A stretch of 64,000 nucleotides of DNA, taken from NCBI RefSeq assembly GCF_016432865.1, contig NC_067401.1, positions 39,618,001 through 39,682,000 on the forward strand. The letters run 5' to 3'. Of this stretch, positions 6,601-62,243 are shown one piece after another. The position numbers and the translations under genes were made by a program. Source of the stretch: Antechinus flavipes. Taxonomy: Eukaryota. Positions within the stretch are counted from its first letter, which is position 1. Each line of letters begins with the position of its first letter. The notes below the pieces were generated by a model that worked only from the letters and a program-made list of their open reading frames with translations, was not told the DNA's origin and did no database searches.

Positions 6601-8596
6601 GGCTAAGGCATCTGGCTGCTGGGCTGGGTAGGGCCATGGCCAATAGGAATCTGGCACCCAAGAGGTATGCTGAGGGAGGAATGAAAGACCAGAGTCACCA
6701 GTTTCAGGGCTGGGGCCAGGCTCCATTCAGCTTGAGACAGAGACTGATAAGAGTGTGTTTGTATGTTTTGTAGGGAAAGCTGGGTTTGAGGAGAGATAGG
6801 GAAGAGGGAGGAATGGATATCCTTGTGATTATCAGATACTTACTCTATTATTAATCTCAAGCCTTAGGCTAAAAGGGCTAATAATTGTCTTCTCCTTGTC
6901 GAATAACCACATTTGGCTTTCTTCCAAGGGGAAATCAAGACACTAGCAGAGAGAAGGGCTCCTAAGGAGTTCATCAGGAAGTAAAATATCAGCATTTAGG
7001 CTCCAGGACTCTTCCCCTAAAGGGACAGTGATGGAGCTGAAAGATGGGAGAAGACTGAGAGTTTCTTTCCCTTCAGTGGGATGTGCCCTCCTGAGTGCTT
7101 GGCCATTCAGTCCCATTACCACGTTTGTAGACAGTCAGACACTCCTGTAGCTGGGGTGGGGAACGGGTAGAAAGGATTTCCACTCCTACATCCTCAGCGG
7201 AACTTATATCCTGGAAGAAAACAAGGGTCCAGTCTGTGACAGACATAATGCCAGTGGAAGTGAGGACAGAAGGAAGCCCGTGGCCATTTCTGTTCTGGGG
7301 GGAGAGCATGGACCAGTGACTTTAGGAATGAGATTTGAAGTAAAGATCAGACTTTGAGGTCATAGGGTGATGATGTCAGAAGGTCTCCTCCCCTCCAGCC
7401 CTGGGGCCAAGGAATGATTGAGAGATTGGGGAGGCAGCTCCCAGGTTAGCCAATACATTTGTTTCCAAGATATCTGGAGTCCATTTCCTCTCCTAATACC
7501 TTCAGTGCTGCCCTTAGTTCATGGGCATCATATTGGGCTGCAGGCTTCAGCAGTGCTACCACAACCTTCTCCAAGCTCCCAGAAAGAGCTGCTTGCAAGG
7601 ATTTCAGTAAGTCCTAGGATAAATATGCAGTAAATAAGTTCTAGAGCAGGGTGGGCAAGAGTGAGAAGGCTGACTAGAATGTACAGGCAAAGGAGCCAAT
7701 TTTGTGGAACTGCAGAGGTTTGGTCGATACTACATTCATGTTGGTCAGTCTGGACCAGATGATGAGCTTGGGGACAATTTCATATGGACAAAGGGGTGCA
7801 TTTTATCTAAGTCAACAGTTCCTCCCATGTCTCCCAAGGGGCTTCTCCCTCTTGGTCTTCTTACCTGCTGGGTGCGCTCCTGGAAGGCTCGGGCAATAAG
7901 TTGCCTTTGTTCACCATTCCGGTTGGTCAGCACATTCACTATGGTGCCCTGATCCACACCTGAACCAGGACAGAGGGCAGAACTCAACCAGAGAGTTTTT
8001 GAATTTGAATTACTCAATATAATGCAGCAAAAACCAAGGCCATAAATATACTGGGGCTAGAATCACTTTGAGAAGAGCAGGTGCTTAAGGAGGTACTAGA
8101 CTGGGGTGATTTCTGTAACTTGTTTTTAAATGATCATGCAAAAAATGTCCCAATTTATTTTCAGTTTCCTGCTTACTCTGTATAATAAGAAATTTTTAAG
8201 AGCAGAGAAAGGAGAGCCCTAACCCATAGAGGCAAGACAGAGAGAAGGACCATGAGAGGGGAAAAGTCACCTTGGCCTGCAATAGCTTCTAGCAGCCGTT
8301 GTACATCCTTGTCCACGTTGAAGCTCAAAAATGGCCTCAGAGTCCCCAAGGTACCCCAAGCTGCAGTCTATAGAAACGTAGGGGAGTTGATATTTGGTTG
8401 AGTTCAAGAAAAAGATCACCTGCTTCATTTTAGTGCCTTGATTTGTGGATAAAAGCTTTCTTTACATACCTGCCGCTAGGGTCACCCCAGCCCGTATTCT
8501 AGAATATCCTCATGGTCCTACCTTGTTGGCCAAGCCCAGGTGGCTGAGGATCTCATGGACCAGGGATGACTCCATCCTTGCATTGCTCACAGACAT
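3636..8596 (-). CDS. ANXA9: Annexin A9, spliced CDS, 3'-partial (first 284 codons)
   Basis: Exons 8522-8596, 8271-8367, 7865-7959, 7500-7613, 7120-7210, 5636-5715, 5194-5253, 3970-4054, 3785-3880, 3636-3694 total 852 nt, all GT-AG and in frame. Translation [51 protein letters not shown]...[15 protein letters not shown] matches recalled human ANXA9. Synteny with CERS2 and SETDB1. Confidence 0.96.
3785..3880 (-). CDS. ANXA9: ANXA9 coding exon 9
   Basis: [32 protein letters not shown], 96 nt. Confidence 0.94.
3970..4054 (-). CDS. ANXA9: ANXA9 coding exon 8
   Basis: [28 protein letters not shown], 85 nt. Confidence 0.93.
5194..5253 (-). CDS. ANXA9: ANXA9 coding exon 7
   Basis: [20 protein letters not shown], 60 nt. 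Confidence 0.93.
5313..5480 (-). mobile_element. MIR/core-SINE
   Basis: attatccccatttcacacatgaggaaacagaggtccagag core. Confidence 0.65.
5636..5715 (-). CDS. ANXA9: ANXA9 coding exon 6
   Basis: [27 protein letters not shown], 80 nt. Confidence 0.94.
6030..6210. repeat. GA-rich (polypurine) low-complexity tract
   Basis: aagaaggaaggg-type repeats. Confidence 0.8.
6320..6542 (+). mobile_element. MIR/MAR1 core-SINE
   Basis: ctagctgtgtga...gtcactcaacttctttctgcctcagtttcctt...aaaatgg...aaggtgctacagaaacactagctattatt. Confidence 0.75.
7120..7210 (-). CDS. ANXA9: ANXA9 coding exon 5
   Basis: [30 protein letters not shown], 91 nt. Confidence 0.95.
7500..7613 (-). CDS. ANXA9: ANXA9 coding exon 4
   Basis: [38 protein letters not shown], 114 nt. 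Confidence 0.95.
7865..7959 (-). CDS. ANXA9: ANXA9 coding exon 3
   Basis: [32 protein letters not shown], 95 nt. Confidence 0.95.
8271..8367 (-). CDS. ANXA9: ANXA9 coding exon 2
   Basis: [32 protein letters not shown], 97 nt, AG/GT. Confidence 0.95.
8522..8596 (-). CDS. ANXA9: ANXA9 coding exon 1 (ATG at 8596)
   Basis: [25 protein letters not shown]; acceptor AG 8612-8611; donor gtagga. Confidence 0.93.
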
Positions 8597-9417
8597 GATG
8601 CTGTTGACAGCTTTGGGGAGAGAAGCAGGAGCTGAGCTGAGCTCCCTTATTCCTCTTGATCCTTTTTGTCACCTAGACCTCCTGCGCTTAGAGTCCCCTT
8701 CCCATTTCCTGCACCTTCTCTTCCCACCCAAAGTTTTTCTTCTCTCTGGTGTAGAAAAAACATCATCAACCTGCTAGGCAGGTTTGGGAATGAGGATTGA
8801 AACTGGAAGCCAGAGAAGCAGAGGAAAAAAGGACCCTCTGTTCCTCTGTCCCTTTGGGGGCCACAGCAATGGAGTACAGCTACAGCTCGGACTGGACTCA
8901 CCCAAACCCCGGGCGATGATCCCTTTAATGTCAGACCTGTGGTCTAAAGTAGATTTTTAAAGGAGTCTTTCCCCTTCACCTCCACAGAAATGGCCTCTGC
9001 CTTCCTTTTCCACCTCTCCTTCGACCATTCCCATTGGCATTATGTCTCAGTCACAGACTGGACCCTAGGTTTCTTCTGAGCTCCCAGTGGGAGAGAATCT
9101 CGGGCGAGGTAGGAAATGAGTGTGTGGGGAGAGGTGAGGACTCCCCTTCCCATTCTTTAAGCTCAAAGCCCCAGCTTCTGAGCCCTCTCCTCCCCAGCCC
9201 TGCTTTCCCCCTGTATCCCATCTATCACTTCGCTTGTCCGCATCTCCTATTCATCTGGCTTTAGGCTGGGATTCTCTCACCCATGGGGCACAAGCCATGT
9301 CCAGGGGGATGAGGGCTTGTTGACCTGTGTGTCTGTGAAAGGCAGCCCTGCCCAGCCCATCCCGAGGGCGCAGAGAGCCCCCATTGTGGGGGGGGGGCAC
9401 AAGATCCGAGCGCTTAC

Positions 9418-9500
9418 CTGGGACAGAGGGTGCTGAGTGTGGGACCAGCTTCTCGGTGATAGTGGAGGGGGCGTGTGCAGGACCAGGCTGGGTTCTGAAT
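9418..9500 (-). other. ANXA9: Candidate ANXA9 non-coding first exon (3' end at 9418; 5' start undefined)
   Basis: Strong donor CAG|GTAAGC at 9417, upstream of the ATG exon, which has only 14 nt of UTR after its acceptor. Confidence 0.5.
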
Positions 9501-11074
9501 CAGGTGACCTCCCTTCCAGACCAGACCAGCTGGTGTCTCCCGCCCTCGGCCCCTCCCATCTGTGGGAGAGGATCTGCTTGTACCTGGGCACCCCCACACT
9601 CTCCTGCCTGGCCTTTCTTCTGGCCCCAGCCTAGCCTCATTCATGCGTCCCACAGCCTCCCTGGGAGCAGCTCAGCGCAGACACAGGGGGCTTTGTGTGC
9701 TCTTTTCCCTAAGGGGGCCAGGTGGTAGGGGCACCAGAATGCAGGGCTGGTTCCCGGCTCCCTGAAGGGAGGGTAGAGTGGGCAAGTCAGACAGGCTCTC
9801 GGCTGATCCCGGGTTTGATAGACCTGGGGAGAACTTGTTGGGGCACATGCCAGGAGGGACACCCCAGGGACAGGCCCCCAGAAGGGTCCCGGCCCAAACC
9901 TCCTTGCACCACTCCCTGGATGTGGAGAACAACCGGGCGCTGTGTTCAGAGCAGCAGGGCAGAGATTTTACAATCCGGGGCTGTCTCGACAAAACCCCAC
10001 TCATCTCTCCAGAAGTCTTGGCAGAAAGAGGGATTTTGGGTGGGCATGCTATAGTGGGGGCTGGGGAAGTGACCTAAAGAAAAGGCATCGGGTTAGCTTT
10101 GAGCTTAGAAATGTGATTCCCAAGAGGCCACGGTGGGGGGTGAGGATCATGGGAGACTAAGATCTCAGAGCCCAGAGATTCAGCTCTTTACCCCCTGCTG
10201 TCCTTTTGCTTTATTGGCTGTCCTAGCCTAAGTGATGCAACCCCAGCAGCCGGGCCCTGCCTCCCTTTGGGTCCCACTGGCAGATAGAACAGCAGGTGAA
10301 CAGCAAGTGAACAGTGCCGAGTGCAGCCGGGGGCCCTGGAGAGCTCCACAAATCTCCTAACGGATCCTCCGAGGACCGGGGACAGCCCTTTCCCCACTTC
10401 CAGGGCAAATTAGGCTCTCTGTCCTCCTTGGGACCCCCTCTCTGGCTTTGCAGCCGGCAAAGGGCTTTTCGTCTCCTCCCTCACCTCGCGTAGACCCCCT
10501 AACGATCAGGTGACTTCTAAAACGCAGATGGTGCCAGTCTGTGCCAGGCCACTGGCAAGAGATTCCAGTGGTGGGAGGTACCTTTGTCCTCTTTTTTTTC
10601 CAATGCCAAAAAATTAAATTAAGTTAAAAAAATACAGATAACGCCCACATGCCTGGGACAGGTGCCTAATTGCTCCTCCAGGGGAATAGTCCAACCTGCT
10701 CCCTTAAGTCCCTCAGCTACAACCTCCAAGAGCCCACAAGAGGGCACCCATGTCAAGAACCTTGGTCTTCAGCAAGTCCAGGGAAAGGGGTCTTGCCCCC
10801 TGGTGGCCGTTTTGGGTCTGCAGTCAGTCCCTCTACCCTAGCTTTCCAAGACTCTAAGGGGAAAAAATCAATGAGACTCCTGGGACAGAGATTCCTGGCC
10901 CACGGCCTGAAGGGCCACCGACGGGGAGAGGAGCAAAGGCAGAAAGAAACAGGTTAAATGTCCCGGTAGCTGCTCTGGGATGAGCTATCTACCGTTCAAA
11001 CCAGCTCACAACTGTAAAAGGGTTGGATTTACTACGTGAGTTCTCTCATTCATGAGCATAATGTAGAGAACTGT

Positions 11075-11250
11075 TAGGTTTCATTCATTCAATCAGTCAT
11101 CCAGTATTTTTTACTTGATCATTTTTTTTACTTGATTTTACTTTAATCACAATTTTTTACTATGTGATAGGGATAAAAAAGCAAAAATGAGATTGTTCCT
11201 GCCTTCAGGGAAGTTAAATTAGATTGGGAGAGACAATGTGTATATACTTA
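11075..11250 (-). mobile_element. L2-like 3' end fragment
   Basis: cattcattcaatcagtcatccagtatt...tactatgtgatagg...cctgccttcagggaagt. Confidence 0.55.
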
Positions 11251-11300
11251 CTTATAAATAAGTACATTAAGTACTTATGTGAGTATTTAATATGTATGGA

Positions 11301-11744
11301 TTTTCTCTTGCCCCTCTCCTTCCTTCCAACCCACGGAGGGGGTGACCACGCAGTCTGACACTCATTAGTCATTCGTTTTTCCCTGCAGTAGCTGTTACTT
11401 CCAGATCTCTGTTCAGTCCCTACCCTGATCCTTTTAGCCACAGTTCAAAAAAAAGGAAGATACCAAAAACTTTTCTGGGGGGTGGGGCGTGTGTGTGTTC
11501 TGAGGCAGAACTGCTCAGAAGGAGAGTTCAGTTAGGGCCTGAACAATAAAGATAATGATTATAAGCCCTTGCTGCCTGTCAAGGAGGGAAGCAGGCAACT
11601 GTCCAGGAGGAGAAGAAACTAAGAAGAAACATCTAGCATGAGGGTGATGTTATTAGCTTTGTCATATTCCTACAATCTTATCCCAATGAGTGCCCTGGCA
11701 ATCCTAACCTCACTCCTGTTCTCACTCATGCCCTCACCCAGGCA
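11301..11744 (+). repeat. Left arm of a ~440-bp inverted duplication
   Basis: Reverse complement of 13071-13505; ~90% identity by eye. Confidence 0.95.
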
Positions 11745-12244
11745 TATAAATAAATATATATAAAAATATAAAAAATATATACTTACGTACATAAGTATAT
11801 AAAATATAAAAAATATGTAAATATATAAAAATAATGTACTTATGTAAGTATTACAAATATAAAAATAATATGTAAGCATATAAAATAATATACTTACATA
11901 ATTATATAAAAATATATACTTGTGTAAGTATATGAAAATATAAAAAATAATATATAAATTTATAAAAATAATCTACTTATGTATTTATATAAAATATAAA
12001 ATAATATACTTGTATATGTATATAAAATATTAAAAATATACTCACATAAGTATATAAAATATTAAAACAATATACTCATATAATTATATAAAATAATATG
12101 CAAACATATAAAAATAAAAAATGATATACATATATAAGTATATACAAATATAAAAATAATATACTTATATAAAATATTATGTTTATACAAGTATATAAAA
12201 TACAAAAATATACTTACATAAGTATATAAAAATATAAAAAATAA
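11745..12244. repeat. AT-rich degenerate minisatellite with palindromic units
   Basis: Recurring atatactta(c/t)(a/g)taagtatat plus aaaatataaaaaat. Confidence 0.9.
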
Positions 12245-13070
12245 ACACAAGGTGATTTTGGGGGTAGGAGAAATCAAGCATTTAGGATCTGGCAAGAGCT
12301 CATGCTTTTTGACATGGAAGAGAAATCTAGTCAAAAGATTCTCTTCCTCCCACATTCCTACCATAAATTTCCCCACTATGGTTCCCTTCATTTCACCTTT
12401 CCCCTTGAACTATCGCCCTGGATTCCAGGAAATACTAGAAATGGTTACTGAAGAAGCTTGTGCTTCTCCCTCTTTAAACACAGTCCCTTTCTTGCATTAA
12501 GCTAGTGGGAGTTCCAAGATTACAGTGGGATAAGGATTCTTACTTTCTTCCCTTCCTGTTCCATGAGTCTCCTAACTAACCAGTTTGAAGAGGAGAACAG
12601 GACTGCTCACCTTAGGCATGAGGAAAAAAAAAAAAGAGAGAGAGAGATGATTAGGTCTAATCTCTTGTTACTAGGACACTGGGCTTGTTTGCTTCTTTCC
12701 CCGACCTTTCCGGCTTTGGGCCATTTCTACCCAGTAACCTCTGTCTCAGGGGGCTTCATTGATTTTTCCCTCCAAACTATTTCAGTCTGTGTTCCAGTTC
12801 TGAAGTCCCTACTAATCATTGTTTCTCTTTCCCATTGTCCCTTTTCTATTGGGTTGCAAAGTTTGCCTGACCTGAAAAAAAGATCTACAATATTCTAACT
12901 CTCTAACTCTCCTGGCAGTCTGCCGGTACCCGGGGGCCTAGGAACTAAAGGCACTGTGGTAGCCACAGGCACCTCCACCTCCCTGACACTTCACTAGGCC
13001 TGGGCAAAGGAAGTGAGTCACACTCCTTGTCACACGGGCACTGTGGGTGTGGCCATACCAGCCCAGCAAT

Positions 13071-13505
13071 TGCCCGGGTGAGGGCATGAGTGAGACCAGC
13101 AGTGAGGTTAGGATTGCCAGGGCACCCATTGGGGTAAGACCGTAGGAGTAAGGACAAAGCTAATAACATCACCCCCATGCCAGATGAGAGCTTAGTTTCT
13201 TCTCCTCCGGACAGTTGCCTGCTTCCCTCCCTGACAGACAGCAAGAGCTTATAATCATTATCTTTATTGTTCAGGCCCTAACTAAACTCTCCTTCTGAGC
13301 AGTTCTGCCTCAAAACACACACGCCCCACCCCCAGAAAAGTTTTTGGTATTTTCCTTTCCTTGAACTGCGGCTAAGAGGATCAGGGTAGGGACTGAATAG
13401 AGATCTGGAAGTAACAGGTACCGCAGGGAAAAACGAATGACTAGTGCCAGACTGCGTGGTCACCCCCTCCATGGGTTGGAAGGAAGAATGAGGGGCAAGA
13501 GAAAA
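13071..13505 (-). repeat. Right arm of the inverted duplication
   Basis: tgcccgggtgagggcatgag...gaggggcaagagaaaa, the inverse of 11301-11744. Confidence 0.95.
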
Positions 13506-15199
13506 GTAACTATGAAAATGGAAAACTGGAAAGGTAGAGGGTATGCTGGGAGCATGAATGAATGCAAGGAAAAAGGAGAACCTAGCAGGCTTGAACAGTA
13601 GAGGGAGCTGGATCCCAAGAGGGCCTGGAACGGAACAATCAAAGGCAGATCTCCCTGGGTAGTATGCCGAAGGAGAGAGAATAGAGTAGGGAAAGAGATT
13701 TGGGAGAGGGAGGTGAAGGTGGGGAGGGAGAGGGGAGGAGGAAAAACTCAGCACAGCTCGATAAAGATTGGGAGGGGAGGAGGTTCTGGGGGGCTAGAGA
13801 AAGAACCTATTCTGGAGTGGGATAAAATGCTAGAAAAGGCCGATGGGGAAATTGGGAAAATATGAAGAGCAGCCTAGAAAACAACATAAAGAGAGAAATC
13901 GAGAGCTGGCCATCTAGGAAGAGTGGAAGGAATCTGGTATATACAATAGTCTTTGGTTCAGACCAAAAAATTGGGGTGTGTGGTCTAAAAGTGTATATCC
14001 CTTTTGCCAAAACTTATTAGTTCTCTTTTAAAATCTTTCTTATGATTATTCCAGAAAATCCAGGTTATGTGAGCACAACAGAGAAAGCGAAACTAGGAAA
14101 ATTAAAATTGGAAAGAGGTTTGGGAAAATGTTGATTTATTAAAAGGTACTGGGACGCTGGACTTGGCCTAAGAGGTTTATGAACAAAGTCTGCCAAGAAG
14201 TAGGTAGGACATAGATGGCAGAGCTGGGGAAGTAGAGGAAAGAAGGGCATCTGGGAAGCTCGGTTTTAGAGGCTAAAGGTGGGAATATGAAGGTTCAAGC
14301 TTGAGGCAGGATACCCCTGCACAAAGGTTAATAACTTAATTTATGGGAAACTTGTTAGCCTCCTTCACCTTTCTCTCTATACATGTAAGCCTCAGACCTA
14401 TTAGTCACATTCTCTGGAAATTGGAAAGGATGTCAGACAGGAGGTGATGATGACTAGAAATAATAGAACTGAATGATATTAACTTAGCCTGGCTCCTTAG
14501 AAAAGACTCTCAACAATGTTCATTTGCACCTTCCCCAGAGTGTTTGGGGGTGCACTGAGACCCAGGCACCCCAACACCAAAGTATGAAGAAGCATCAGCT
14601 AACACCTACTCTTTCTCCGCAAATTCTCCTTGGAAGACAGGATGGAAATGTGCGGAAATGACCAGTTGGAAGAATTGGAGATTGAGGCAATTGGGCTGAA
14701 ACTATGTAACCATGTATCTGTATCTGAGGCAAGAGTTACAATTGAGTGGAGGTGAATGGGACAGGGTACTATCTTTATCTCCCATTTTTATTATTCAGTC
14801 TAAATTGGCTCAAGAGCCTTCGGAACCCTCCTGTGCCCCAGGGGCAAGTTGAACCCTACCAAGATCACGTCTTCCCCCACCCCCTCCCAAGTCCTTTGCA
14901 AGATCCACCTTCCCGCAGTTCAAATATCTGACAGATCTTTGTGGTTAGAAAACTCCACTGACCTTGACAACTTCCCTCTCTGCTTAGGGAAGCCACTCAT
15001 TCGCAACTGAAGTGCTTTGAATTCAAGTGATAAAGGCACTTTTCCAAGATCGCGTTTCTACCTGTGGGGCTTAGCTAGGAACGAGGGGGTGGGGTGGGGC
15101 GGGCACGAGGGACGAATCTGTTTTCTGACCACTCAGAAGGTCCCCTACCTCGGCAGCCCGGCTCAGGCGAGGGTGGGTGGGAGTTCGATCTGTGGCTCG

Positions 15200-16250
15200 G
15201 CCATTGATTGCTAAGGTTTGTAGCAGACCCCCGCCCCCGCCCCCGCCCTCGCCCGACTCGGCCCAGCCCAGTCTCTCCCTCCCACTCCCCCAGCGCCCCG
15301 TAGGCTCCCGCGTTGCCTCTGACGGACGCGCTGGACTCCACTCTTTCTAGACTTGGGCTGGGATTCGGACTCCGCCGGCGGCGGGAGGAGGGAACGAGCG
15401 GGCAGGCGGGCAGGCGGAAGGGGGAGGAGAGGAGAGCAGCCGAGCCCTGTGGAGTCAGGGGGTGGGGGAAGAAGGGCGGACGGAGGAGGTGAGAGCAGAG
15501 GACAGCCCGGCCACCGCGGACGCTGCCAAGTAAGTCTGCACTCGCCTGCAAGCTCCGGGGGCCCCGCGGAGAGGGCGCACGGGGGGCAAGGGGAAGAAGT
15601 CCGACGGGGGGGGGGGGTCCGGGAGAGGTTGGTCCGGACCGAGGGGCGCCCTGGCTCGTGGCTGGCGCTGCCCCGGCTCCCAGGGTTACCCGCTGGCGGC
15701 CCGCCCAGCCCCCGGGGCTGGGGAGCAGACTAGGCGCCCGAACTGCCGGGCTCCGGGAAGGGGGGGGGGGCAGTGCCGGGACCGGAGCGGCCGCTGCCTC
15801 CCAGGCCTCCGCCTGTTCTGCTCATGGCGGCCGGAGCTTGGGGGGGAGGGAAGGGACGGTCAGGGGAGGGACGAGGCCTGAGTCGGGCCTGGCCGGGGCC
15901 CCCGGCTGCGGGCCCCACCGAGGCGGGGCCCGTGTACGTTCCCCTTAGCCAGCGCGGGGCTCTGCCTTCCTCCAGCCCCTTTCGCGCCAGGCTTAGCGAT
16001 TTCTCCCGCCGGGCAACAGGTCCGGGAGGGAAGCCTCGCCCAGGACCACGAAAGGGTGCGGGCCTGGCCCTCGATCCTGGAGGTGAGGCTAAAGAGCCAG
16101 CCAAATAATCCTGAGCCGCAGGGTGCCCTCCCGGCTGCAGGGGGCCGGGCTGCGTGTCACCCCATGTGCCAGCATAGAAGGAAAAGGGCGGCGTGGCGAG
16201 ACCACCTCGGAGAGACTAGCGGCCACATCTGCTTAACGGGAAACGGGAAG
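15200..16250 (+). promoter_or_regulatory. CERS2: CERS2 CpG-island promoter
   Basis: Very GC- and CpG-dense; tandem Sp1 GC boxes ccccgcccccgccccgccc at ~15229-15248. Confidence 0.85.
15370..15529 (+). other. CERS2: CERS2 non-coding exon 1 (5' start approximate)
   Basis: Donor CCAA|GTAAGT at 15530, downstream of the GC boxes; the ATG exon carries only 1 nt of UTR. Confidence 0.65.
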
Positions 16251-19200
16251 GAGGGGTTAAGAAAGGCAGCCCTGGTTCCTCTGGGCCTGCCACTCCTGCA
16301 CCGTTATGGGGTGTGTATGTGTGCGGGCTGGGCTGGCCGGCCCGGGGGGGGGAGTTTGATGCTGGTTGAGCTGGTTCTCTCTATTGCAGGCTGCTAATTA
16401 CAGAAGTGGGAAAGGCAAATTGACAGGCGGCTTAATTGCAGGTGTTTGGCTAAAGTAACTGGCCCATCTTGGGGTTTCTTTTACTCCTAGGTTCTTAGCT
16501 CCTTCTGACCGTCCCCATTAAGTTTTAGCTTGAGTTGTTTGTTCCTTGTTGGCTCAAAAGCCCTAACTTCGTTGTCTGGAAGTTCTAGACAAAGCACACT
16601 GGTCTCTGAGGTTCTTTGGAACCCGGCTACTCTCTGTGGACCTTTTCCCTTCAGAGTATCAGGTTGAGAAGGGCTTTGACAGGGGTTTTCTCTCCCGTTT
16701 CCATTAGGTCTATTGGGGAGCTGTCACTAACTGGGTGGGCATGTCGGTGCATAAGAAGCTTCAGTGACTTTATATTTTATTGTGTCTGAGCATATATTTC
16801 CTTGTGTTTGTTGTTTTGTATGTGTAACTATGTCCCTGGCTGTCTTTTAATCGAATCCTTTAGATTTTGCTCTGTCTGAGAATGAGAAGTCTTGTTCCAA
16901 AGAGAGCTTCATTTTTTCTTCTACTACTCCCTTTGCCAGTGCAATTTGTTTACTGTCTTCTAGAAGTCTAGAAAAAAGATTCTTTTTTTCCCTTCTTCTT
17001 TATCTTCCCATTCTTTTTTCTTACCTTGTTTTTTTAGCTTTCTTACTTGTCAACTTGTCCCTGCCCTCAGGGTTAGAAATCTTACCTGCTTACTCAGCCT
17101 GGGCCTGTTGTGTTTGGGTGCTGGGCTCCTAGGTAGGGACCCAGCTGGGCTTTGTGTCAGGTGACCTTAAATAAGACCTGAGGGCCCTTTTCTTCTTGTT
17201 TTTTCTATATCCCATTACTAACCTTATTTTGGGGGGTTGGGAGTGAGGAAGAAAGGTAGAGTGTTTACCGAATTGCCTGAATTTGGCTCTCCTGCCTTCA
17301 TCTTTCCTCTTCCAGCTTTTTCCACTGTGTTTCCCCAGAGGTTGCCTTTTAACTTGAAAATAAAGTTTACGAGAGCTTCCAAAGTTTTTCTAGTCCCAGA
17401 TTTTATAGTTACCCTGCAAAAGATTACAGGAGGCTGAAATTATAACTGGTCTCCCTTTGACCCGTATGCTTCTATCTCTAGACCAGCTCTTTGACCCCTA
17501 CCCCCCCCTCCCCAAACAAAAAGAGTTGTGAGGAAGGTTAGGGTTAGAATGAGAAGAGGTAAGGGATGGGCTGGGCAGCTCCCAGCTCAAGTTCCTTGTA
17601 ACTGAATGCCTAGGAAATCTCTGCCGTCCTGGCAGCTTTCCAGCCTTTGCCTCAGAAAGTGGTGTCTGTGTTTCCAGAGGAGGGAGAACTGCTCTTTGTG
17701 TCTGTGTGTGTCTGTTTCTTTGTGTTTAGGGGGCAATCCTGGGAGTGGAAAGGTTTGTATTGAGTAAGGTGAGGGGAAGTGTGCAAGTCCAGGACCCACT
17801 CTGAAGAGCGGGAACTAAGCTGGTAGTGAAGGGAGCAAATGTTCTCTCTGTGAGTTTCCTGGCTCTGGGCTCTCACTTTTGTTCTTTCTCACTGGCTCGT
17901 GGGTCCGAAGAAGCCCACTGGAGAAGGGGGCAGGAGCCTGAAAGCTTTACGGGAAGCAGAACTTAAGAGCAGAGCTATGCACATCTGTTCCATGTACCTG
18001 ATTTGTTTCCCTGCTGTGCTTCTCTCTGTCCTGCCTGGCGGGCTGAGGGATTAAGGGAGCTGCTGCTAATGGAGGCAGAGGAGAGTGGGCAAAGGCTGTT
18101 TGGGAGGGCTGTGGTTAGAGAGAGCCTGAAACATAGGAGAGAACGCCATTATTTTTCATTATTCCAATCATTGCGAAACATCCACTTTACCTTGATCCTG
18201 GGAGAAGGGTGGAGGAGGGGAGGCCTTATGCTTGAGCTGGTTACTCCTAGTCCTTTCCTTGCTAACATCCCCGCTCCCTTAAACCCTCCCTCCTGACCCC
18301 AACCCCATCCAAGAACAAGATGTACCTGGGCTTCTGGAGTCGAAAAAGCAAAGGCAAAGAGATGCTTTCTTACCACAGTCTTCAGGACCTTTGCCAAGAT
18401 CTCTAAGCACTTAATTTTCACAGAAATCCAGAAGGATTTGCGTGAAATGCTCTGCTGGCCATCCTTCTCGCCTCTTATTGGGTGAAAGGACAACCAGAAC
18501 CTAGTTCTGATATCTGATAGGATTTATATTTCATGAGAAGGATCAACCCAGTATAAAGCCCATTTGGTAGGCTGATTTGTCTGGAACTGGAAATTTTGTG
18601 TGGCAGAGGGAGGAAAAGAAAAGAGGGGAGTAGTTGAGGGGTATGGACATGTCCCAGGTAGAACTCTAATCCCCACTAGAGTGGGGACTAGTGCCTTAAG
18701 GCAAAATTATTATTAAGCCTCCTACCTTATCTCTTCCTTTTTTTCAGTTGTACTCATTACCTCCCATATTGCTTTTGTTTGGGGAGAAGGGAGAGATAAG
18801 GTTGAGGGGGAGATTTCACTATAGATAATTTTATTAGTCTCATTTAAAAAGGTTTCATTTCACTTTCAAGTCAAATCATTTAATCCCTCAGAGAAAGAGG
18901 GTGAAAAGGTCTTAGTTTAGGCGGAGAACCGAGTTGAGGGCGGGGAGGGCCCTAAGCTTCTTTAGTTTTTGTGACTCCTGAGGGCAGTGTTCAAGGAGGG
19001 GAAGTGGTGAATACTAGAGGGTAAAGTCCTTGTGCTGGGAGTATTTGCCCATGTCTGACAAGAGTTTGGATTTCGAAAGATCTCCGAAGGGGGTGGGGGA
19101 AAAGGGAGGAAGAGGATGATAGGGCCAAGCTGTGTTATGATCTGAGGACTTAAGTCTTCTGCCATCTCCCCAAAGTCCTCATGAGGAGGAAGAGGCCATT

Positions 19201-20497: not shown

Positions 20498-23400
20498 GTG
20501 AGCATCCCGCCCTTCTGCCTGCCTTTCCCACCTGCTCTCTCTGAGGTCTTTCAGCTGGCAGTCATTGGTGGCCAGGCCTTGGTGTCCCCACTTTGCCCTC
20601 CCCGTAAAGGCCGGCATTGTCTGCCTGAGGCTTTAGCTCCCCCAGGCCATTCTTTGAATAGCCATTTGTTTCTTCCCCTCCCCCAGGCCACTGGTAGACA
20701 CAAGCTGCTTTGTCCAGAGCTGTGGGAAACAAAGGAGGCCAGAGGGGGTGCCAGGGAACCTTTCTCTCACCCTGAGCTGGGGAAACTGAGGCCTTAGAGA
20801 AGGTTCTAGGCGCCTAGTCTCTTCCCCCTCCCCCACCTCAGATGTCATAGGGGGTCCTTGAAAAGGACAGTCCCTCTCCTTAACCAGATGCCTTTCCCAG
20901 TTATGTGGCTACCCCGCTGGCTGCCCTCCTAAATGTGAAGGAGAAGACCCGACTTCGAGCATCGCCCAACCCAACCCTGGAGAACTTCTACTGCACCAGT
21001 GGCAAACACCCCAAACAGGTATGGAGGAGGGGAGCCTCAAGGCCCCCGGGCCGCCCCTCCCAGGTGCACCTGACCCATTGGATGCCAGATCCTAGCAGGG
21101 GAGGGAGAGAAGGAGGTGAGCGCCAGAGGGAAGTGATTGGTGAGGCAGGAGGAAAACGGAGAGTTCTGGCTTTGCAGCCAAAAGATCTTGGCTCACTGGC
21201 TCTGCTCTTTGCCTCTTGGGTGACTTCTGGCCAAGCATTTAACCCCTTTTGACCAGTTTCATCTAAAATGAGAGGATTGTATGTCACATGAGCTTTCCCC
21301 TCCTTCCCAGCTCTGAAATGATGCTCCTTGGGCCTGTCAGTGCTAGAGAATAAAGGCCTTCATTTTGGGGGCAAGGTTTGTGGCTGAAATCTAGTGCCCT
21401 AGCCAGAGGAGTGGGTGCAGAAAGAAGGCAAAGGAGGGTTAGGGGATTGGGGAAAGGAATTAGGGAGGCAGCGTCAGAGATCAGCCGGATTCTCTGTCCA
21501 AGCAGTCACTGCGAGCTTTTCCGTCTCTCCCCAACCCTCTCAGGCAGAGGTGGAGCTCTTGTCCCGGAAGAGCGGGCTCTCTAGCCGTCAGGTGGAGCGA
21601 TGGTTCCGGAGACGCCGAAATCAGGACCGGCCGAGTCTGCTCAAGAAGTTCCGAGAGGCCAGGTTGCAGGGGAGCCAGGGCTGCCGGGCGGAGGGATTAG
21701 GGAGTGGCGGGGTGTGGGAAAGGATGAAATAGAGATGGGTCTTGATGGAGGGGGTGAAGGGTCTGGAGGGCAGGCAGGGAGCCCAGGGTCTGCTCCCTAG
21801 TGCCGTCCCACTGAGCGCCTTTGCTTCTTCCTTCAGTTGGAGATTCACCTTTTATCTCATTGCCTTCATCGCCGGCATGGCCGTCATTGTGGATGTGAGT
21901 TGAGGGCATGAGGGAGGAGTTGGAGGTTGTCAGGTGGAGACTGACTTATAAGACTTGGTTCCCCCTTCAGTATTTCAGTTCCTCTGATTTGCCACTATCT
22001 TTTCTCAGAAACCTTGGTTCTATGACATGAAAGAAGTATGGAAAGGTTATCCCATACAGGTACGAGAAGGGGGGACTATAGCTCCTCATCAGGGGCGAGA
22101 GGCATAAAAGGTTTTGGTGGGGGGGAGATGGAGGGAATCTGTAACATCCTTGGGAGCTACTGAGAAGAGAGATCTGAAGGTTCTGGGGGAGACTCCTTGT
22201 TGGGGTAAAATGCATACCCTAGAATCGATGAATGAGTGTAGTGGGAGTGGGTGGGTGAGGCTTTTGGAAAGCACCTGTGCTTTGGTGAGCAGTTTTCCTT
22301 CCTTTCTCCTAGTCTACCATCCCTTCTCAGTACTGGTATTACATGATAGAACTCTCCTTCTACTGGTCCCTACTCTTCAGTATTGCTTCTGATGTGAAAC
22401 GAAAGGTAGGTCCACAACTGGCAGAGGGACGGTTTGGAGAGTCCTCTAGGTACGGGATCCTCCTGTTTATTGCTAGAAGCTCTCATTTGTCTGTTCAGTT
22501 GTGCTAAATTTGAAAGTTAGCAGCCATGCCAGATCTCAGACTCTTCCTTTGATTTGAGACTTAACTCTTTAGTGTCATGGGCCCCTTTCGCAGTCTGTTG
22601 AAACCTATGAACCCCTTTTCCAGATGTTTTTAGATGAATTAGAATGAGATAGAATTACCAAGTCTGTTGAGATAGATGTGAATTTTTTCCACACCACCCA
22701 AACTTTTGTAGACCCCCTCACCTTGGGGTTCATGGACCCAAGTTTAGGAATCCCTACTTTAGAAAGTAGGGCAGAAGGGGCAAGGGTTGGAAGATATCTT
22801 GAAGAAGGAAAGAGGGAACTGTGGGATTGGGGAACAGAAAAATTCTCATCTCATGATGAGAATAATGTCCTCCTTAGGATTTCAAAGAACAGGTGATCCA
22901 CCATGTGGCCACTATCATACTCATCAGCTTCTCCTGGTTTGCCAACTATATCCGGGCTGGGACGCTCATCATGGCTCTCCATGACTCCTCTGACTACCTG
23001 CTGGAGGTCAGGATTCCCCTGGATTCCCCTAACCCAAGATCCCAGACCAGATCACTCTTCCCCTGCCCCCTTTGCCTCCTTTAGGGATGTTGGGTTGGGC
23101 TAAGGGGTCAATACCAATGTCCTGGTCTTATCTGTATGTACAAATAATAGACATACACACCCACATTACTTATGTATGTCGGAGGGGGACTTGGGCCCTT
23201 GATGATGGCTACAGAGGGCTGGGGGTGTCTGTGCAGTCAGCCAAGATGTTTAACTACGCTGGATGGAAAAATACGTGCAACACTATCTTCATTGTCTTCG
23301 CCATTGTCTTCATCATCACTCGATTGGTCATCTTGCCCTTCTGGTGAGTGGGAGCCAGGGGTGCTGCCTGCATCGGGGGTGGGTCTCTGTCCCCCTCGCC

Positions 23401-25480: not shown

Positions 25481-48398
<22,918 letters not shown>

Positions 48399-49064
48399 GC
48401 CTGAGGTTCTGTGCAGGACAAAAAAAAAGAAAGAAAGAAAGAAAGAAAACTGTAAAACAAACCAAGACCATTAGTTAACTAGGAAATCCATGTCCCAGCC
48501 CTATCCTCAGATAATCCAAATATAATTCACTTTGAATCCTGCACTATCTCCTGAACTAGAAGTAGTTAGTTTGTAGTAGTAACTGACTGGTAAACCAGAA
48601 TGGAATTAAAGAGCACAGAAAAATATTAGGGACACAATCCTATAGATTACATAAATACCCATTTTGCTAGAATAGTGGAAGGGAAAGGAGTAAGCATTTT
48701 TACAGTACCAGGCTCTATGCTAAGCAATTTTACAAATATAACTTCATTAGGCTCTCAAAAAAAACTCTTGTGAGGTAGGTGCTATTATCACCTCCATTTA
48801 AACAACTGAGGAAATGGATGCAAACAGTGGTAAAGTGACTATACATACATCTTATTTTAATGGCATGTCATGTCTATACATATCAGTATTCATACCTGTA
48901 GAAGACATATCAAGATAAAGGATTCTAGGAGTCCAAAAGACTTGGATTCAAGTCTTGCCTGTGACATATATTAGCTGTGTGGCCATAGTCATAGTCATTT
49001 AACTCCTCAGAGGCCCAGGCAAATCTGTAAGAATTTAAGTTGATATGCCCAAAGAGCTATCAAT

Positions 49065-49678
49065 TAGTGCATACTTTTTGATCCAACAGTGTCTCTACTG
49101 GGCCTGTATCCCAAAGAGATCATAAAAAAGGGAAAGGAAACTACATGTGTAAAAATGTTTGTAGTGGCAAGAAGCTAGAAATTGAATGGATGCCCATCAG
49201 TTGGAGAATGACTGAATAAGTTATGGTACATGAATATAATAGAGTATTATTGTTCTATAAGAAATGAGTACGATGATTTCAGAAAGGCTTGGAGAGACTT
49301 ACATGAACTAATGCTAAGTGAAATGAGCAGAACTAGAATATTTACACAGTAACAAGATTATGTGATAATCAACACTGATGGATTTGGCTCTTTTCAACAA
49401 TGAGGTAATTCAGGCCAGTTATAATAGACTGGTGATGGAGAGAGCTATCTACATGAAGAGAGAAGACTAGGGGGACTGAATGTGGATCATAACATAGCAT
49501 TTTCACATTTTTGTTGTTTGCTAGAAGAATTGCACATGTTTAACATCTATTGGATTACTTGCCATATAGGGGAGAGGGTGGGGGGAAAAATTTGGAACAC
49601 AAGGTTTTACAAGAATGAATGTTGAAAATTATCCATGCATGTGTTATGAAAATAAAAAGCTTTAATTAAAAAAAAAAA
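49065..49678 (+). mobile_element. L1 3' end (ORF2 end, 3'UTR, polyA)
   Basis: tttgatccaacagtgtctctactgggcctgtatcccaaagag...aataaaaagctttaatt(A)n. Confidence 0.85.
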
Positions 49679-50735
49679 GACAAGTTGAATCAGTATGAAG
49701 TAAATCATAGGTCTAGAAAAACAAAAATCATGTTTGTTTCTAGTAGTAAATCCATGAGACTATCAATTGTTGTTGAGGGTTTTTTTTTTTTTTTTTTTAA
49801 GGAGTGGAGGTAGAGAACAATTAAAACAGCATCACATGAATTCGTTTAATAAAAAGGATGATTTTTCTATGAAGTTTTAGTACCTAAGTGACCAATGAGA
49901 ATAAGAAAAGCAAGTATGTCTAACAAGACGACTATGTTATGATCAACTGTGATGGACTTGGCTCTTAACAATTCAGTGATTCAAGGGATTTCAAGACTTG
50001 GAATGGAAAGAGCCATCCACTTCTAGAGAGAGAACTATAGAGATTGACTGTGGATCAAAGAATAGTGTTTTCACCTTTTTGTTGTTTGTTTTCTTGTTTT
50101 TTTCCCCTTTTGTTCTGATTTTTCTTGCACAGCATGACAAATATGGAAATGTGTTTAGAAGAATTGCAGTTCTGCAAGGGTGAATGTTGAAAATTATCCA
50201 TGCATATGTTATGAAAATAAAAAGCTTAAAAAAATAAGACGTTAGGTTGAATCTCAGTAAATCACAGGTCTAAGAAAACAAAAATCAAGTCCATTTCTAG
50301 TCATGGCAAGTTTCTGGTAGTAAACCCATAAGCCTATCAATTCTTGAGGGTTTTTTGGGTTTTTTTTTGAAGAGGAAGTGGGGGTAGGAGAACAACTAAA
50401 ACAGCACCACAAGCAATTAAAGAAAGGATACATTCATTTAATAAAAAAGGATTTTTTTTCCTATGAAGTTTTAGTTCCTAAGTGACCAGTGAGAATAAGA
50501 AAAGCAAGTATGTCAGTAATGTGATGATCAATTGTGATGGACTTGACTCTTAATTCAGTACATCAAATCAATTCCAACAGACTTGGAATGGAAAGCCCTC
50601 TGCATCCAGAAAGAACTGTGGAGATTGACTGTGGATCAAAGCACCTTTTTGTTGTTTGTTTTCTAAGTTTTTTCCCCTTTTGCTTTGATTTTTCTTGCAT
50701 AATTAACAAATATGAAATGTGTTTAGAAGAATTAT
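49616..50735 (+). repeat. Tandem duplication, period ~565 bp
   Basis: Copy A ~49616-50168 and copy B ~50181-50735; each is L1 tail, then unique sequence, then an L1 3'UTR piece. Confidence 0.85.
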
Positions 50736-54281: not shown

Positions 54282-55365
54282 AATAGAGGCCTCATTTCCA
54301 AAATACATAGAGAATTGACATAAATTTATAAGAAATCAAGCCATTCTCTGATTGATAAATGGTCAAAGGATATGAATAGACAATTTTCAGATGAAGAAAT
54401 TGAAACTATTTTTAGTCATATGAAAAATCACTATTGATCAGAGAAATGCAAATTAAGACAACTCTGAGATACCACCACACACCTGTCAGATTGGCTAAAA
54501 TGATAGGAAAAGATAATGATGAATGTTGGAGGGGATGTAGGGAAACTGGGACACTGATGCATTGTTGGTGGAATTGTGAATGAATCTAACCATTCTGGAG
54601 AGCAATTTGAAACTATGCTCAAAAAGTTATCAAACTGTGCATACATACCCTTTGATCCAGCAGTGTTACTTCTGGGCTTATATCCCAAAGAAATACTAAA
54701 GAAGGGAAAGGGACCTGTATGTGCCAAAATATTTGTGGCAGCTCTGTGGTGGCTAGAAACTGGAAACTAAATGGATGCCCATCAATTGGAGAATGGCTGG
54801 GTAAATTGTGGTATATGAATGTTATGGAATATTATTGTTCTGTAAGAAATAACCAATAGGATGATTTCAGAGAGGCCTGGAGAGACCTACATGAACTGAT
54901 GCTGAGTGAAATGAGCAGAACCAGGAGATCATTGTACACGGCAACAACAACATTATACAACGATCAATTCTGATGGATGTGGCTCTCTGTGAGTTGATTC
55001 AAACCAGTTCCAATTGTTCAGTAATGGAGAACCTATCTACACCAAGAGAGAGGACTATGGGAACTGAGTGTGGACCACAACATAGCATTTCCACTCTTTC
55101 TGTTGTTGATTTGCATTTTTGCTTTCCTTCTCTGTTTTTTTTTTTTTCTTTTTAGATCCGATTTTTCTTGTGCAGCAAGATAACTAACTGTATAAATATG
55201 TATACATATATTGGATTTAACATATATTTTAACATATTTAACATGTATTGGACTACCTGTCATCTAGGGGAAGGAGTGGGAAAATTTGGAACGGAAAGTT
55301 TTGCAAGGGTCAATGTTGAAAAAATTACCCATGCATATGTTTTGTAAATAAAAAGCTATAATAAA
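54282..55365 (+). mobile_element. 5'-truncated L1 (ORF2 C-terminus and 3'UTR)
   Basis: cctcatttccaaaatacatagagaattgac...aataaaaagctataat(A)n; candidate TSD aaataatc at 54274-54281 and 55366-55373. Confidence 0.9.
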
Positions 55366-56389
55366 AAATAATCGAGGCCCATCCTTATACATTTCTCCCC
55401 AATCCAGTTTTAAGATCTCTATCCTTAGACAAAGAATACTTGGCAAAGTCCATAATCCAAAATCCTGTACATACTCCTTAGTAATTTAGGAATATTCTGC
55501 ATTATATTTTTGAATACATTTCCCAGTGTACAAGAGTACTAATGAGTCTTGGGAAAAGTGTAGGTGACACAAATTTGGAAATTAATTTACATTCTTCCCT
55601 CTCCAGAATATTTAAATTCCTGCTCTAGTGGAAAAACAAATACCATATTCCAGTTCTGATTCCAGGAGCACTTGCTCTTTTTCCAAAACAGAAAGAAATG
55701 CTATTGTCAGGTTCTTTGGCAATATTGGCCACCCATGACAGGCAATTGGGTCAATTCTAGGCAAAATGACTATTATATCCATCAGGAAATATCATCCACA
55801 GGCTATGCAAAATAGCCTGATTAAAGACCTCTAGATAATTACAACATGTAATTAAGAAACTCTGTACATGCATAATGAAAACACAAAGCAAATAAATATT
55901 AAAATACAAGAAAGAAAATGACAGGAGCATGTGACAATCTGTCTATCAGTAAACATACATATATATAAGATTTAAGTGTTGCCCTGGATTCACACAGGAT
56001 ATTGTTAATTAAATCAGTCTGGTTATTGGTCAACTAGTTTATGTTTTTTTTTGTGGAAATTCTGTGGAATTAGCTGCCCCAATATTAGTTGTTGGTATTG
56101 GCTGATTAAGGTCTGCAAAAGAACCATGATTTGCTCTTCCTAAACCTCAGTTTATAGAGGGCTCAGGCCATATAATAACTATCAATATTATTAGTTCTTG
56201 AAGTACCTAATTAAAAGTCTCTTTCAAGTGAAATGTCTGTTAAGACACAAATAGACTTGATCCATTGCCATCATTTATTGCCAGTAGGTAAGCTATTTGA
56301 ACACTCTAATAAACCTTTGGACTCTGATGGATGTTCGTCTTCACAAATTTAAGGCAAAGACTGACAGTCATACAAAGTCTGCTCTATAA

Positions 56390-60985: not shown

Positions 60986-62243
60986 CTTTTTTTTGTTTTG
61001 TTTTGATTAGCTATACATCTTTATTTTATTTTTTTTTTTTACTAACTTTTTATTGATAGAACCCATGCCAGGATAATTTTTTTTTCAGCATTATCCCTTG
61101 CATTCACTTCTGTTCCGATTTTTCCCCTCCCTCCCTCCACCCCCTCCCCTAGGTGGCAAGCAGCCCTTTACATGTTGAATAGGTTATAGTATATCCTAGA
61201 TACAATATACGTGTGCAGAACTGAACAGTTTTCTTGTTGCACAGGGAGAATTGAATTCAGAAGGTAGAAATAACCTGGGAAGAAAAACAAAAATACAAGC
61301 AGTTTATATTCATTTCCCAGTGTTCTTTCTTTGGGTGTAGCTGCTTCTGTCCATTTTTGATCTGAATTAACTCTCTTTATTGAAGAGCTCCACTTCCATC
61401 AGAATATATCCTCAAACAGTATCGTTGTTGAGGTATATAATGATCTCCTGGTTCTGCTCGTTTCACTTAGCATCAGTTCATGTAAGTCTCGCCAGTCCTC
61501 TCTGTATTCATCCTGCTGGTCATTCCTTACAGAACAATAATATTCCATAACATTCATATGCCACAATTTACTCAACCATTCTCCAGTTGATGGGCATCTA
61601 TTCATTTTCCAGTTTCTAGCCACTACAAACAGGGCTGCCACAAACATTTTGGCACATACAGGTCCCTTTCCTTTCTTTAGTATCTCTTTGGGGTATAAGC
61701 CCAGTAGAAACACTGCTGGATCAAAGGGTATGCACAGTTTGACAACTTTTTGAGCATAATTCCAAATTGCTCTGCAGAATGGCTGGATGTGTTCACAATT
61801 CTACCAACAATGTATCAGTGTCCCTGTTTTCCCACATCCCCTCCAACATTCCACATTATCTTTCCCTGTCATTCTAGCCAATCTGACAGGTGTGTAGTGG
61901 TATCTCAGAGTTGTCTTAATTTGCATTTCTCTGATTAATAATGATTTGGAGCATATTTTCATGTATCTAGAAATAGTTTCAATTTCTTTTTCTGAGAATT
62001 GTCTGTTCATATCCTTTGACCATTTATCAATTGGAGAATGGTTTGATTTCTTATAAATTAGAGTCAATTCTCTATATATTTTGGAAATGAGGGCCTTTAT
62101 CAGAACCTTTGATTATAAAAATGTTTACCCAGTTTATTGTTTCCCTTCTAATCTTGTCTGCATTTGTTTTGTTTGTACAAAAACTTTTCAATTTGATATA
62201 ATCAAAATTTTCTATTTTGTGGTCAATAGTGATCTCTAGTTCT
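60986..62243 (-). mobile_element. 5'-truncated, relatively young L1 with perfect 16-bp TSD
   Basis: TSD taaatgaatcaattta at 60970-60985 and 62244-62259; ORF2 C-terminal remnants (MFLLGLYPKEILKKGKGP...; ...TTLRYHYTPVRLA). Confidence 0.92.

What the first reader, a model, noticed from the sequence alone, without database searches (positions are those of the whole stretch)
11301..13505. ~440-bp inverted duplication between the divergent ANXA9 and CERS2 promoters
Seen: 11301-11744 is the reverse complement of 13071-13505 at roughly 90% identity by eye, with a 1.33-kb spacer. The arms do not resemble any SINE, LINE or LTR I recognise, and there is no target-site duplication at the outer ends (tatgtatgga vs gtaactatga). 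The left arm ends exactly where the AT-rich palindromic array starts. Inference: a local template-switch or foldback event copied part of a probable regulatory element toward ANXA9. An unrecognised long-TIR transposon is the alternative. The arms could form a long hairpin in ssDNA or read-through RNA (a possible ADAR substrate) and could promote inversion of the spacer.
Basis: partly seen in the sequence, partly recalled or inferred. Interest (0 to 1): 0.75.

Follow-up and report, generated by a model that had tools for sequence, protein, structure and literature searches.

The report
Old inverted copy inside AT-rich array
A 0.44-kb piece of DNA upstream of a marsupial ceramide-synthase gene was copied backwards, millions of years ago, into a fragile AT-rich hairpin-forming repeat 1.3 kb away. 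This is a real but ordinary scar of DNA-break repair, with no sign of a function.

Summary
11301-11744 is the reverse complement of 13071-13505: 446 aligned columns, 90.4% identical with gaps, 93.1% over aligned bases. The 22 transitions and 8 transversions point to real, old divergence, not an assembly artefact.

The anatomy favours a local copy over two mobile-element insertions or a long-TIR transposon:
- The left arm sits inside the AT-rich palindromic array, with array-type units on both sides, so it is the derived copy.
- The right arm's outer end cuts through the most purine-skewed tract of the window, which runs on past the arm, so it is the native source.
- Neither arm, nor the whole unit, has a target-site duplication above chance.
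- The arms have no LTR, SINE or TIR hallmarks.
- There is no third copy in 64 kb.

Best reading (about 0.55): a templated inverted insertion at a break or stalled fork in the array, roughly 9-27 million years old.

Orthologous loci and long reads were out of reach too. Two copies of a low-copy dispersed repeat therefore stay a live rival (about 0.25).

Nothing supports a regulatory role. The longest identical run is 37 bp, so spacer inversion now looks unlikely. Editing of a hairpin RNA is untested. Interest is low.

The parts
11236..11300 (.). Remnant of the AT-rich palindromic array on the left (outer) side of the left arm
   Evidence: It holds two array-type palindromic cores (11243-11260 and about 11268-11286). 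The same motif occurs 10 times in 11745-12245 and only 3 times in the other roughly 62 kb. See also D4, I19 and I23. Local alignment to the array gives z=3.1 against shuffles, and neighbouring 75-bp blocks give z<=0.1.
11301..11744 (-). Left arm: the derived, inverted copy
   Evidence: Reverse complement of 13071-13505 at 90.4%/93.1% identity. It is flanked on both sides by array sequence, and GC drops from about 0.45 in the arm to about 0.10-0.30 at both edges. Its first 35 nt are 86% pyrimidine, but the flank beyond is unskewed.
11745..12245 (.). AT-rich array (GC about 10%) of short palindromic units; the probable site of the break or stalled fork
   Evidence: TRF finds periods of 26, 33, 84 and 137. 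There are many internal inverted repeats. As single-stranded DNA it folds at -49.6 kcal/mol against -28.4 +/- 3.8 for shuffles, z=-5.6.
12246..13070 (.). Unique part of the spacer, probably native sequence continuous with the right arm
   Evidence: No other copy in the window. The 111-aa ORF has no Pfam domain. GC does not jump at 13070|13071.
13071..13505 (+). Right arm: the probable native source of the copy
   Evidence: GC is level across both of its edges. Its last 35 nt (86% purine) are the start of a purine-rich tract that continues outside the arm.
13471..13920 (+). Purine-rich tract that the outer duplication breakpoint (13505|13506) cuts through
   Evidence: 13506-13920 is 73.3% purine, the most strand-skewed 415-bp stretch of the window (top 0.08% of 1,261 windows). 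It is not a tandem repeat.

Best explanation
This is a local, non-transposon inverted duplication. A 435-444 bp segment that natively lies about 2 kb upstream of the ceramide-synthase CpG island (right arm, 13071-13505) was copied in reverse orientation. The copy went into a break or stalled fork inside an AT-rich, hairpin-forming palindromic array 1.3 kb away (left arm, 11301-11744). The source stayed in place. Shown: the two copies, their orientation, the copy's position inside the array, the source's continuity with its flank, the lack of TSDs, and the age signal. Inferred: the mechanism. The nascent plus strand would leave its template at 11300, copy the plus strand from 13505 back to 13071, and return to the array (two template switches of FoSTeS/MMBIR type). 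Capture of such a copy by end joining is the alternative. Also inferred: the event is 9-27 My old, and the pair is now a neutral relic with no demonstrated function.
For: 1. The arms are real and old, not an artefact: K2P distance 0.073 and ts:tv 22:8.
2. The left arm is embedded in the array. Array-type palindromic cores lie on both sides of it: 2 in the 65 bp to its left, 10 in the 500 bp to its right, and 3 in the remaining roughly 62 kb.
3. The right arm's outer end lies inside the most purine-skewed tract of the window. That tract continues for 415 bp beyond the arm, while the left copy carries only its first 35 nt and then abuts unskewed array DNA. This is what a breakpoint in native sequence gives, not the end of a mobile element.
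4. No TSD above chance for the left arm, the right arm or the whole unit. The best exact matches are 5, 0 and 4 bp, and 61% of random position pairs give 4 bp or more. At this divergence a 5-8 bp TSD should survive with at most one mismatch in 89-96% of cases.
5. No tRNA, 7SL or 5S head, no Rfam hit and no Pfam domain.
6. No third copy in 64 kb. The window's other repeats are all 67-83% identical and unrelated to the arms.
7. The array folds far better than shuffles, z=-5.6. Template-switch loci in apes are enriched in AT-rich and poly(dA:dT) DNA, which is prone to fork stalling (PMC7954356).
Against: Genome-wide copy number was not measured, so a low- or mid-copy dispersed family cannot be excluded. 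The junctions show only 0-1 nt of microhomology, whereas FoSTeS/MMBIR junctions typically show 2 nt or more (PMC9199198). About 3.7% divergence per copy could have erased it, or end joining could explain it. The array remnant left of the arm is short (65 bp), and its alignment score alone is only modestly significant (z=3.1). One arm end reads TG.../...CA, as an LTR end would. No orthologous locus was available to show the pre-insertion state.
Confidence: 0.55

Rival explanations
1. The arms are two independent, oppositely oriented, full-length insertions of one dispersed repeat family (a solo LTR or a roughly 440-bp retroposon) that happened to land 1.3 kb apart.
For: About half of an Antechinus genome is repeats, and LTR elements are put at 15.4% (PMC9290055). 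Most short inverted pairs in mammalian genomes are mobile-element pairs (general knowledge). The arms are co-terminal at both ends. In right-arm orientation the unit starts with TG and ends in AAAA. AT-rich DNA is a classic target of LINE-mediated insertion (general knowledge). Other readers' notes report many ERV LTR oddities in this genome (unchecked).
Against: Neither arm has a TSD, although TSDs should survive at this divergence. TG/CA is present at one end only. There is no poly-A beyond 4 A, and no Pol III head or Rfam hit. No third copy lies in 64 kb. The right arm's end is continuous with a purine-rich tract outside it. At 90% this is by far the most similar repeat pair in the window, and it is also the closest pair.
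Confidence: 0.25
2. The whole 2.2-kb unit (11301-13505) is one non-autonomous DNA transposon or foldback element with 440-bp terminal inverted repeats.
For: The geometry fits: long inverted ends around a non-coding interior. No known family could be excluded by a library search, because no repeat library was available.
Against: No TSD flanks the unit (best exact match 4 bp, at chance level). Array sequence lies both outside the left end and inside the unit, which a single inserted element does not explain. The right end runs seamlessly into a purine tract. The interior has no transposase remnant (partial test). There is no other copy in the window.
Confidence: 0.07
3. It is an assembly artefact, for example a chimeric foldback read or a mis-join around the AT-rich array.
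For: AT-rich palindromic arrays are hard to assemble. No reads could be laid on the region.
Against: Artefactual foldbacks give near-identical arms. These differ by 30 substitutions with a 2.75:1 transition bias that includes CpG-type changes, plus 13 gap columns. That is an evolutionary signature, not a sequencing-error one.
Confidence: 0.03

Closest known systems
Replication-based template switching (FoSTeS/MMBIR) and short-range template-switch mutations (PMC9199198; Walker et al. 2021, PMC7954356)
   Same: A nearby sequence is copied in inverted orientation and the source is kept. There is no TSD. The event sits in AT-rich, structure-forming DNA that is prone to fork stalling.
   Different: At 444 bp the insert is far longer than the short-range events described in apes, and far shorter than the kb-Mb clinical rearrangements. 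The junctions show 0-1 nt of microhomology instead of the usual few bases.
Templated or inverted insertions at double-strand breaks (yeast foldback insertions, PMC11724301)
   Same: An inverted copy of neighbouring sequence is placed at a break.
   Different: According to that paper's abstract those insertions are mostly about 5-34 bp and copy DNA right next to the break. Here the copy is 444 bp and its template lies 1.3-1.8 kb away.
Fold-back inverted duplications of human chromosomes (PMC3907307; reviewed in PMC9199198)
   Same: Inverted duplicate arms separated by a single-copy spacer.
   Different: Those duplications are large and tied to a terminal deletion and a dicentric intermediate. 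This one is a small block bounded on both sides and inserted into an otherwise intact region.
Palindromic AT-rich repeats (PATRRs) of human chromosomes 11, 17 and 22 (from general knowledge; not read here)
   Same: AT-rich DNA able to form hairpins or cruciforms, acting as a break site.
   Different: The array here is a 0.5-kb tandem run of short (about 18-bp) palindromes, not one long near-perfect palindrome. The outcome is an insertion, not a translocation.
Inverted SINE or LTR pairs (for example inverted Alu pairs as ADAR substrates)
   Same: Inverted arms of about 0.4 kb within 2 kb that would form long double-stranded RNA if co-transcribed (duplex energy -768 kcal/mol).
   Different: The arms show no mobile-element hallmarks, and they lie between two divergent promoters, not inside a known transcript.

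Membership tests
Solo LTR / ERV LTR pair | 5'-TG ... CA-3' termini at both ends | tested here: not met
   In right-arm orientation the unit starts TGCC but ends ...GAGAAAA. The bases just outside the arms differ between the copies, so the ends cannot be moved outward.
Solo LTR / ERV LTR pair | 4-6 bp target-site duplication around each copy | tested here: not met
   The right arm has no match of 4 bp or more within +/-8 bp of its ends. The left arm's best exact match is a 5-mer displaced by 7-8 bp in AT-rich DNA, which is chance level.
SINE / LINE-mobilised retroposon | Pol III-type head (tRNA, 7SL or 5S derived) | tested here: not met
   ARAGORN finds 0 genes. Rfam finds 0 matches at E<=1 over 9000-17000. 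Sensitivity to decayed heads is limited.
SINE / LINE-mobilised retroposon | A-rich 3' tail plus a 7-20 bp TSD | tested here: not met
   Only AAAA stands at the shared end, and no TSD was found.
Long-TIR DNA transposon / foldback element | TSD flanking the whole unit | tested here: not met
   The best match is an exact 4-mer, off the boundaries. 61% of random position pairs do as well.
Long-TIR DNA transposon / foldback element | Several copies in the genome sharing the same ends | not testable with these tools
   There is no copy elsewhere in the 64-kb window.
Templated inverted insertion by template switching (FoSTeS/MMBIR-like) | Inverted copy of nearby sequence with the source retained and no TSD | tested here: met
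   The direction (right arm as source, left arm as copy) is inferred.
Templated inverted insertion by template switching (FoSTeS/MMBIR-like) | Microhomology at the switch junctions | tested here: not met
   There are 0 nt at 11300|11301 and at most 1 nt at 11744|11745, read directly from the sequence. About 7% divergence may have erased it, so this lowers the claim of membership but not the claim of a local copy.
Templated inverted insertion by template switching (FoSTeS/MMBIR-like) | Breakpoint in DNA that forms structures or stalls forks | tested here: met
   The array has GC of about 10% and folds as ssDNA at z=-5.6. For the literature link.
Templated inverted insertion by template switching (FoSTeS/MMBIR-like) | An ancestral empty site in related species | not testable with these tools

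The most novel reading that the evidence does not exclude
The pair is not a neutral scar. One option is that it is the first sighting of a lineage-specific, TSD-less long-inverted-repeat mobile element. The other is that it acts as a cruciform- or dsRNA-forming boundary between the divergent annexin and ceramide-synthase promoters, transcribed as upstream RNA and edited by ADAR.
Probability: 0.06. Interest if true: 0.5.

Novelty: new member of a known kind. Interest (0 to 1): 0.2.

Why it matters
If the local-copy reading is right, this is a clean natural example of a few-hundred-base templated inverted insertion at a palindromic AT-rich array. That size class lies between the tens-of-bases template switches catalogued in apes and the kilobase-to-megabase clinical rearrangements. 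Here both the source and the fragile target are still readable. It has modest value as an anecdote about mutational mechanism and as a possible phylogenetic marker within dasyurids. There is no evidence that it affects either neighbouring gene.

Tried and rejected
- This left four things untested: copy number from read depth, the long-read check of the assembly, spacer-inversion polymorphism, and the RNA and A-to-G editing scan.

- Three uses need stating. A Pfam scan that included three ORFs from inside the stretch gave no hits. A place-based 'relatives' look-up came back blank.

**Searches that found nothing**
- Earlier findings by place and by words.
- Rfam and tRNA scans.
- Flank-to-flank similarity beyond the arms.

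**Readings considered and rejected**
- ERV 'two U3 ends' mini-provirus, as other readers noted elsewhere in this genome. Here the TG/CA ends face inward and there is no 6-bp TSD.
- Helitron. The ends are not TC...CTRR and the insertion is not between A and T, read directly from the sequence.
- The purine tract as an overgrown SINE tail (idea). It is not tandemly repeated.
- CpG asymmetry between the arms as a sign of constraint. The count is 4:1, p=0.375.

Full report
**Observation.** The repeat finder recovers it as four collinear blocks. A gapped local alignment gives 11301-11744 against the reverse complement of 13071-13505: 446 columns, 403 identities, 30 mismatches and 13 gap columns. That is 90.4% identity overall and 93.1% over aligned bases. 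Blastn of either arm against the window finds only itself and its partner, at E=1.8e-168. Similarity stops abruptly at all four ends, and the flanks beyond the arms share nothing. The spacer is 1,326 bp. It consists of a 0.5-kb AT-rich array (11745-12245, GC about 10%) and 826 bp of unique sequence.

**Context.** Stop-to-stop reading frames with an annexin repeat lie on the minus strand at 7745-8017 (Pfam Annexin, E=1.8e-6). Frames with a homeodomain and a TLC domain lie on the plus strand at 21403-23081, and they carry ceramide-synthase motifs. CpG-rich islands sit at about 9200-10500 and 15000-16300. I did not test the specific names ANXA9 and CERS2. An earlier follow-up note says the genome is an Antechinus (not checked here).

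**Real and old, not an artefact.** The differences are 22 transitions and 8 transversions. Five are CpG-to-TpG/CpA changes. The K2P distance is 0.073, and the longest identical run is 37 bp. Foldback artefacts of assembly would give near-identical arms. This is the pattern of evolutionary decay. Dating depends on the rate assumed:
- 1.37e-9 per site per year, the rate used for Antechinus PSMC (PMC9290055), puts the split near 27 My.
- 2.2e-9 and 4e-9 give 17 and 9 My.

**Which arm is the copy.** Three observations give a direction.
- First, the left arm is embedded in the AT-rich array. The array's palindromic core (like TATACTTACATAAGTATA, up to 4 mismatches) occurs 10 times in 11745-12245 and once at 11243. 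A second core at about 11268-11286 is two mismatches from the unit at 11835. Only three more cores occur in the other roughly 62 kb (also D4, I19 and I23). The 75 bp left of the arm align to the array at z=3.1, while neighbouring blocks do not. The arm therefore splits the array.
- Second, GC drops sharply at both edges of the left arm, from about 0.45 to 0.10-0.30. It is level across both edges of the right arm.
- Third, the last 35 nt of the right arm are 86% purine. They run straight into 13506-13920, which is 73.3% purine. That is the most strand-skewed 415-bp stretch of the window (top 0.08% of 1,261 windows) and it is not a tandem repeat. The left copy carries only those 35 nt, as pyrimidines, and then meets unskewed array DNA.

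The outer breakpoint thus cuts through a native feature on the right. The right arm is the source and the left arm is the copy.

**Mobile-element hallmarks.**
- A scan for direct repeats around each arm and around the whole unit allowed +/-8 bp of slack. It found nothing above chance: best exact matches of 5, 0 and 4 bp, while 61% of random position pairs give 4 bp or more. At about 3.7% change per copy, a 5-8 bp TSD should survive with at most one mismatch in 89-96% of cases.
- TG/CA stands at only one end of the unit, and that end faces inward in both arms.
- The other end has only four A.
- ARAGORN and Rfam find nothing.
- The ORFs in the arms and spacer have no Pfam domain.
- The window's other internal repeats are 67-83% identical and unrelated to the arms.
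- A single long-TIR element is also hard to square with array sequence lying both outside its left end and inside it.

**Mechanism (inferred).** The array folds as single-stranded DNA far better than shuffles: -49.6 against -28.4 +/- 3.8 kcal/mol, z=-5.6. AT-rich and poly(dA:dT) DNA is where template switches cluster in ape genomes, and it is linked to fork stalling and breaks (PMC7954356). The polarity fits two switches. A nascent plus strand leaves its template at 11300, copies the plus strand from 13505 down to 13071, and returns to the array at 11745. FoSTeS and MMBIR normally leave microhomology at the junctions (PMC9199198). Here I see 0 nt at the outer junction and at most 1 nt at the inner one. 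So either the microhomology has decayed, or a copied fragment was captured by end joining. A classical foldback does not fit, because the copy is a bounded block whose template lies 1.3-1.8 kb from the insertion point.

**Consequences.** Folded as RNA (RNA energy parameters), 404 of 444 left-arm bases pair with the right arm in the minimum-energy fold of the 2.2-kb unit. The arm-to-arm duplex energy is -768 kcal/mol. A long hairpin is therefore certain if one strand is ever exposed or transcribed as a unit. Whether that happens is unknown. With identical runs of 37 bp or less, homologous recombination between the arms should now be inefficient (general knowledge of minimal homology requirements), so a current inversion polymorphism is unlikely. 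There is no sign of constraint: divergence looks neutral and the 4:1 CpG retention asymmetry is not significant.

**What could not be done.**
- The decisive tests were out of reach: genome-wide copy number, orthologous loci, long reads and RNA.
- No marsupial genome or repeat library is among the collections.
- After the decline I kept the letters of 10500-14500 out of DNA, genome and paper searches. The exceptions are listed under Tried and rejected.
The exons were scanned singly by reference.

**Verdict.** The feature is real and measured exactly. The most likely reading is an old local templated inverted insertion into a fragile AT-rich palindromic array (0.55). The main rival is two copies of a low-copy dispersed repeat (0.25). 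It is a new member of a known kind, and interest is low.

Noticed in passing
window 11745-12245 (plus 11236-11300): An AT-rich array (GC about 10%) of short palindromic units of about 18 bp (like TATACTTAYRTAAGTATA) separated by A-rich spacers. TRF periods are 26, 33, 84 and 137. Its ssDNA fold has z=-5.6. It resembles a miniature PATRR and may be a fragile site in its own right.
   Followed up: partly
window 13471-13920: A complex, non-tandem purine-rich tract (73% purine on the plus strand), the most strand-skewed 415 bp of the window. It lies about 1.5 kb upstream of the ceramide-synthase CpG island. It could form triplex (H-DNA) structures; this was not examined.
   Followed up: partly
window 54283-55372 and 61028-62100: A 1.1-kb inverted pair at 77% identity. 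Related fragments lie at 49044-49518, 43226-43444 and 50168-50237. This looks like an older dispersed repeat family, unrelated to the arms.
   Followed up: no
window 49350-50733: A roughly 570-bp-offset direct self-similarity (49350-50165 against 49921-50733, 72%). It suggests a decayed tandem duplication or the internal repeats of a mobile element.
   Followed up: no
One array-like palindromic core lies nearby at 1870.
   Followed up: no
window 12980-13070: Just inside the spacer next to the right arm are GGAAGTGAGTCAC (looks like an ETS/AP-1 composite site) and GGGTGTGG (looks like a CACCC box). These were recognised by eye from memory and not tested.
   Followed up: no
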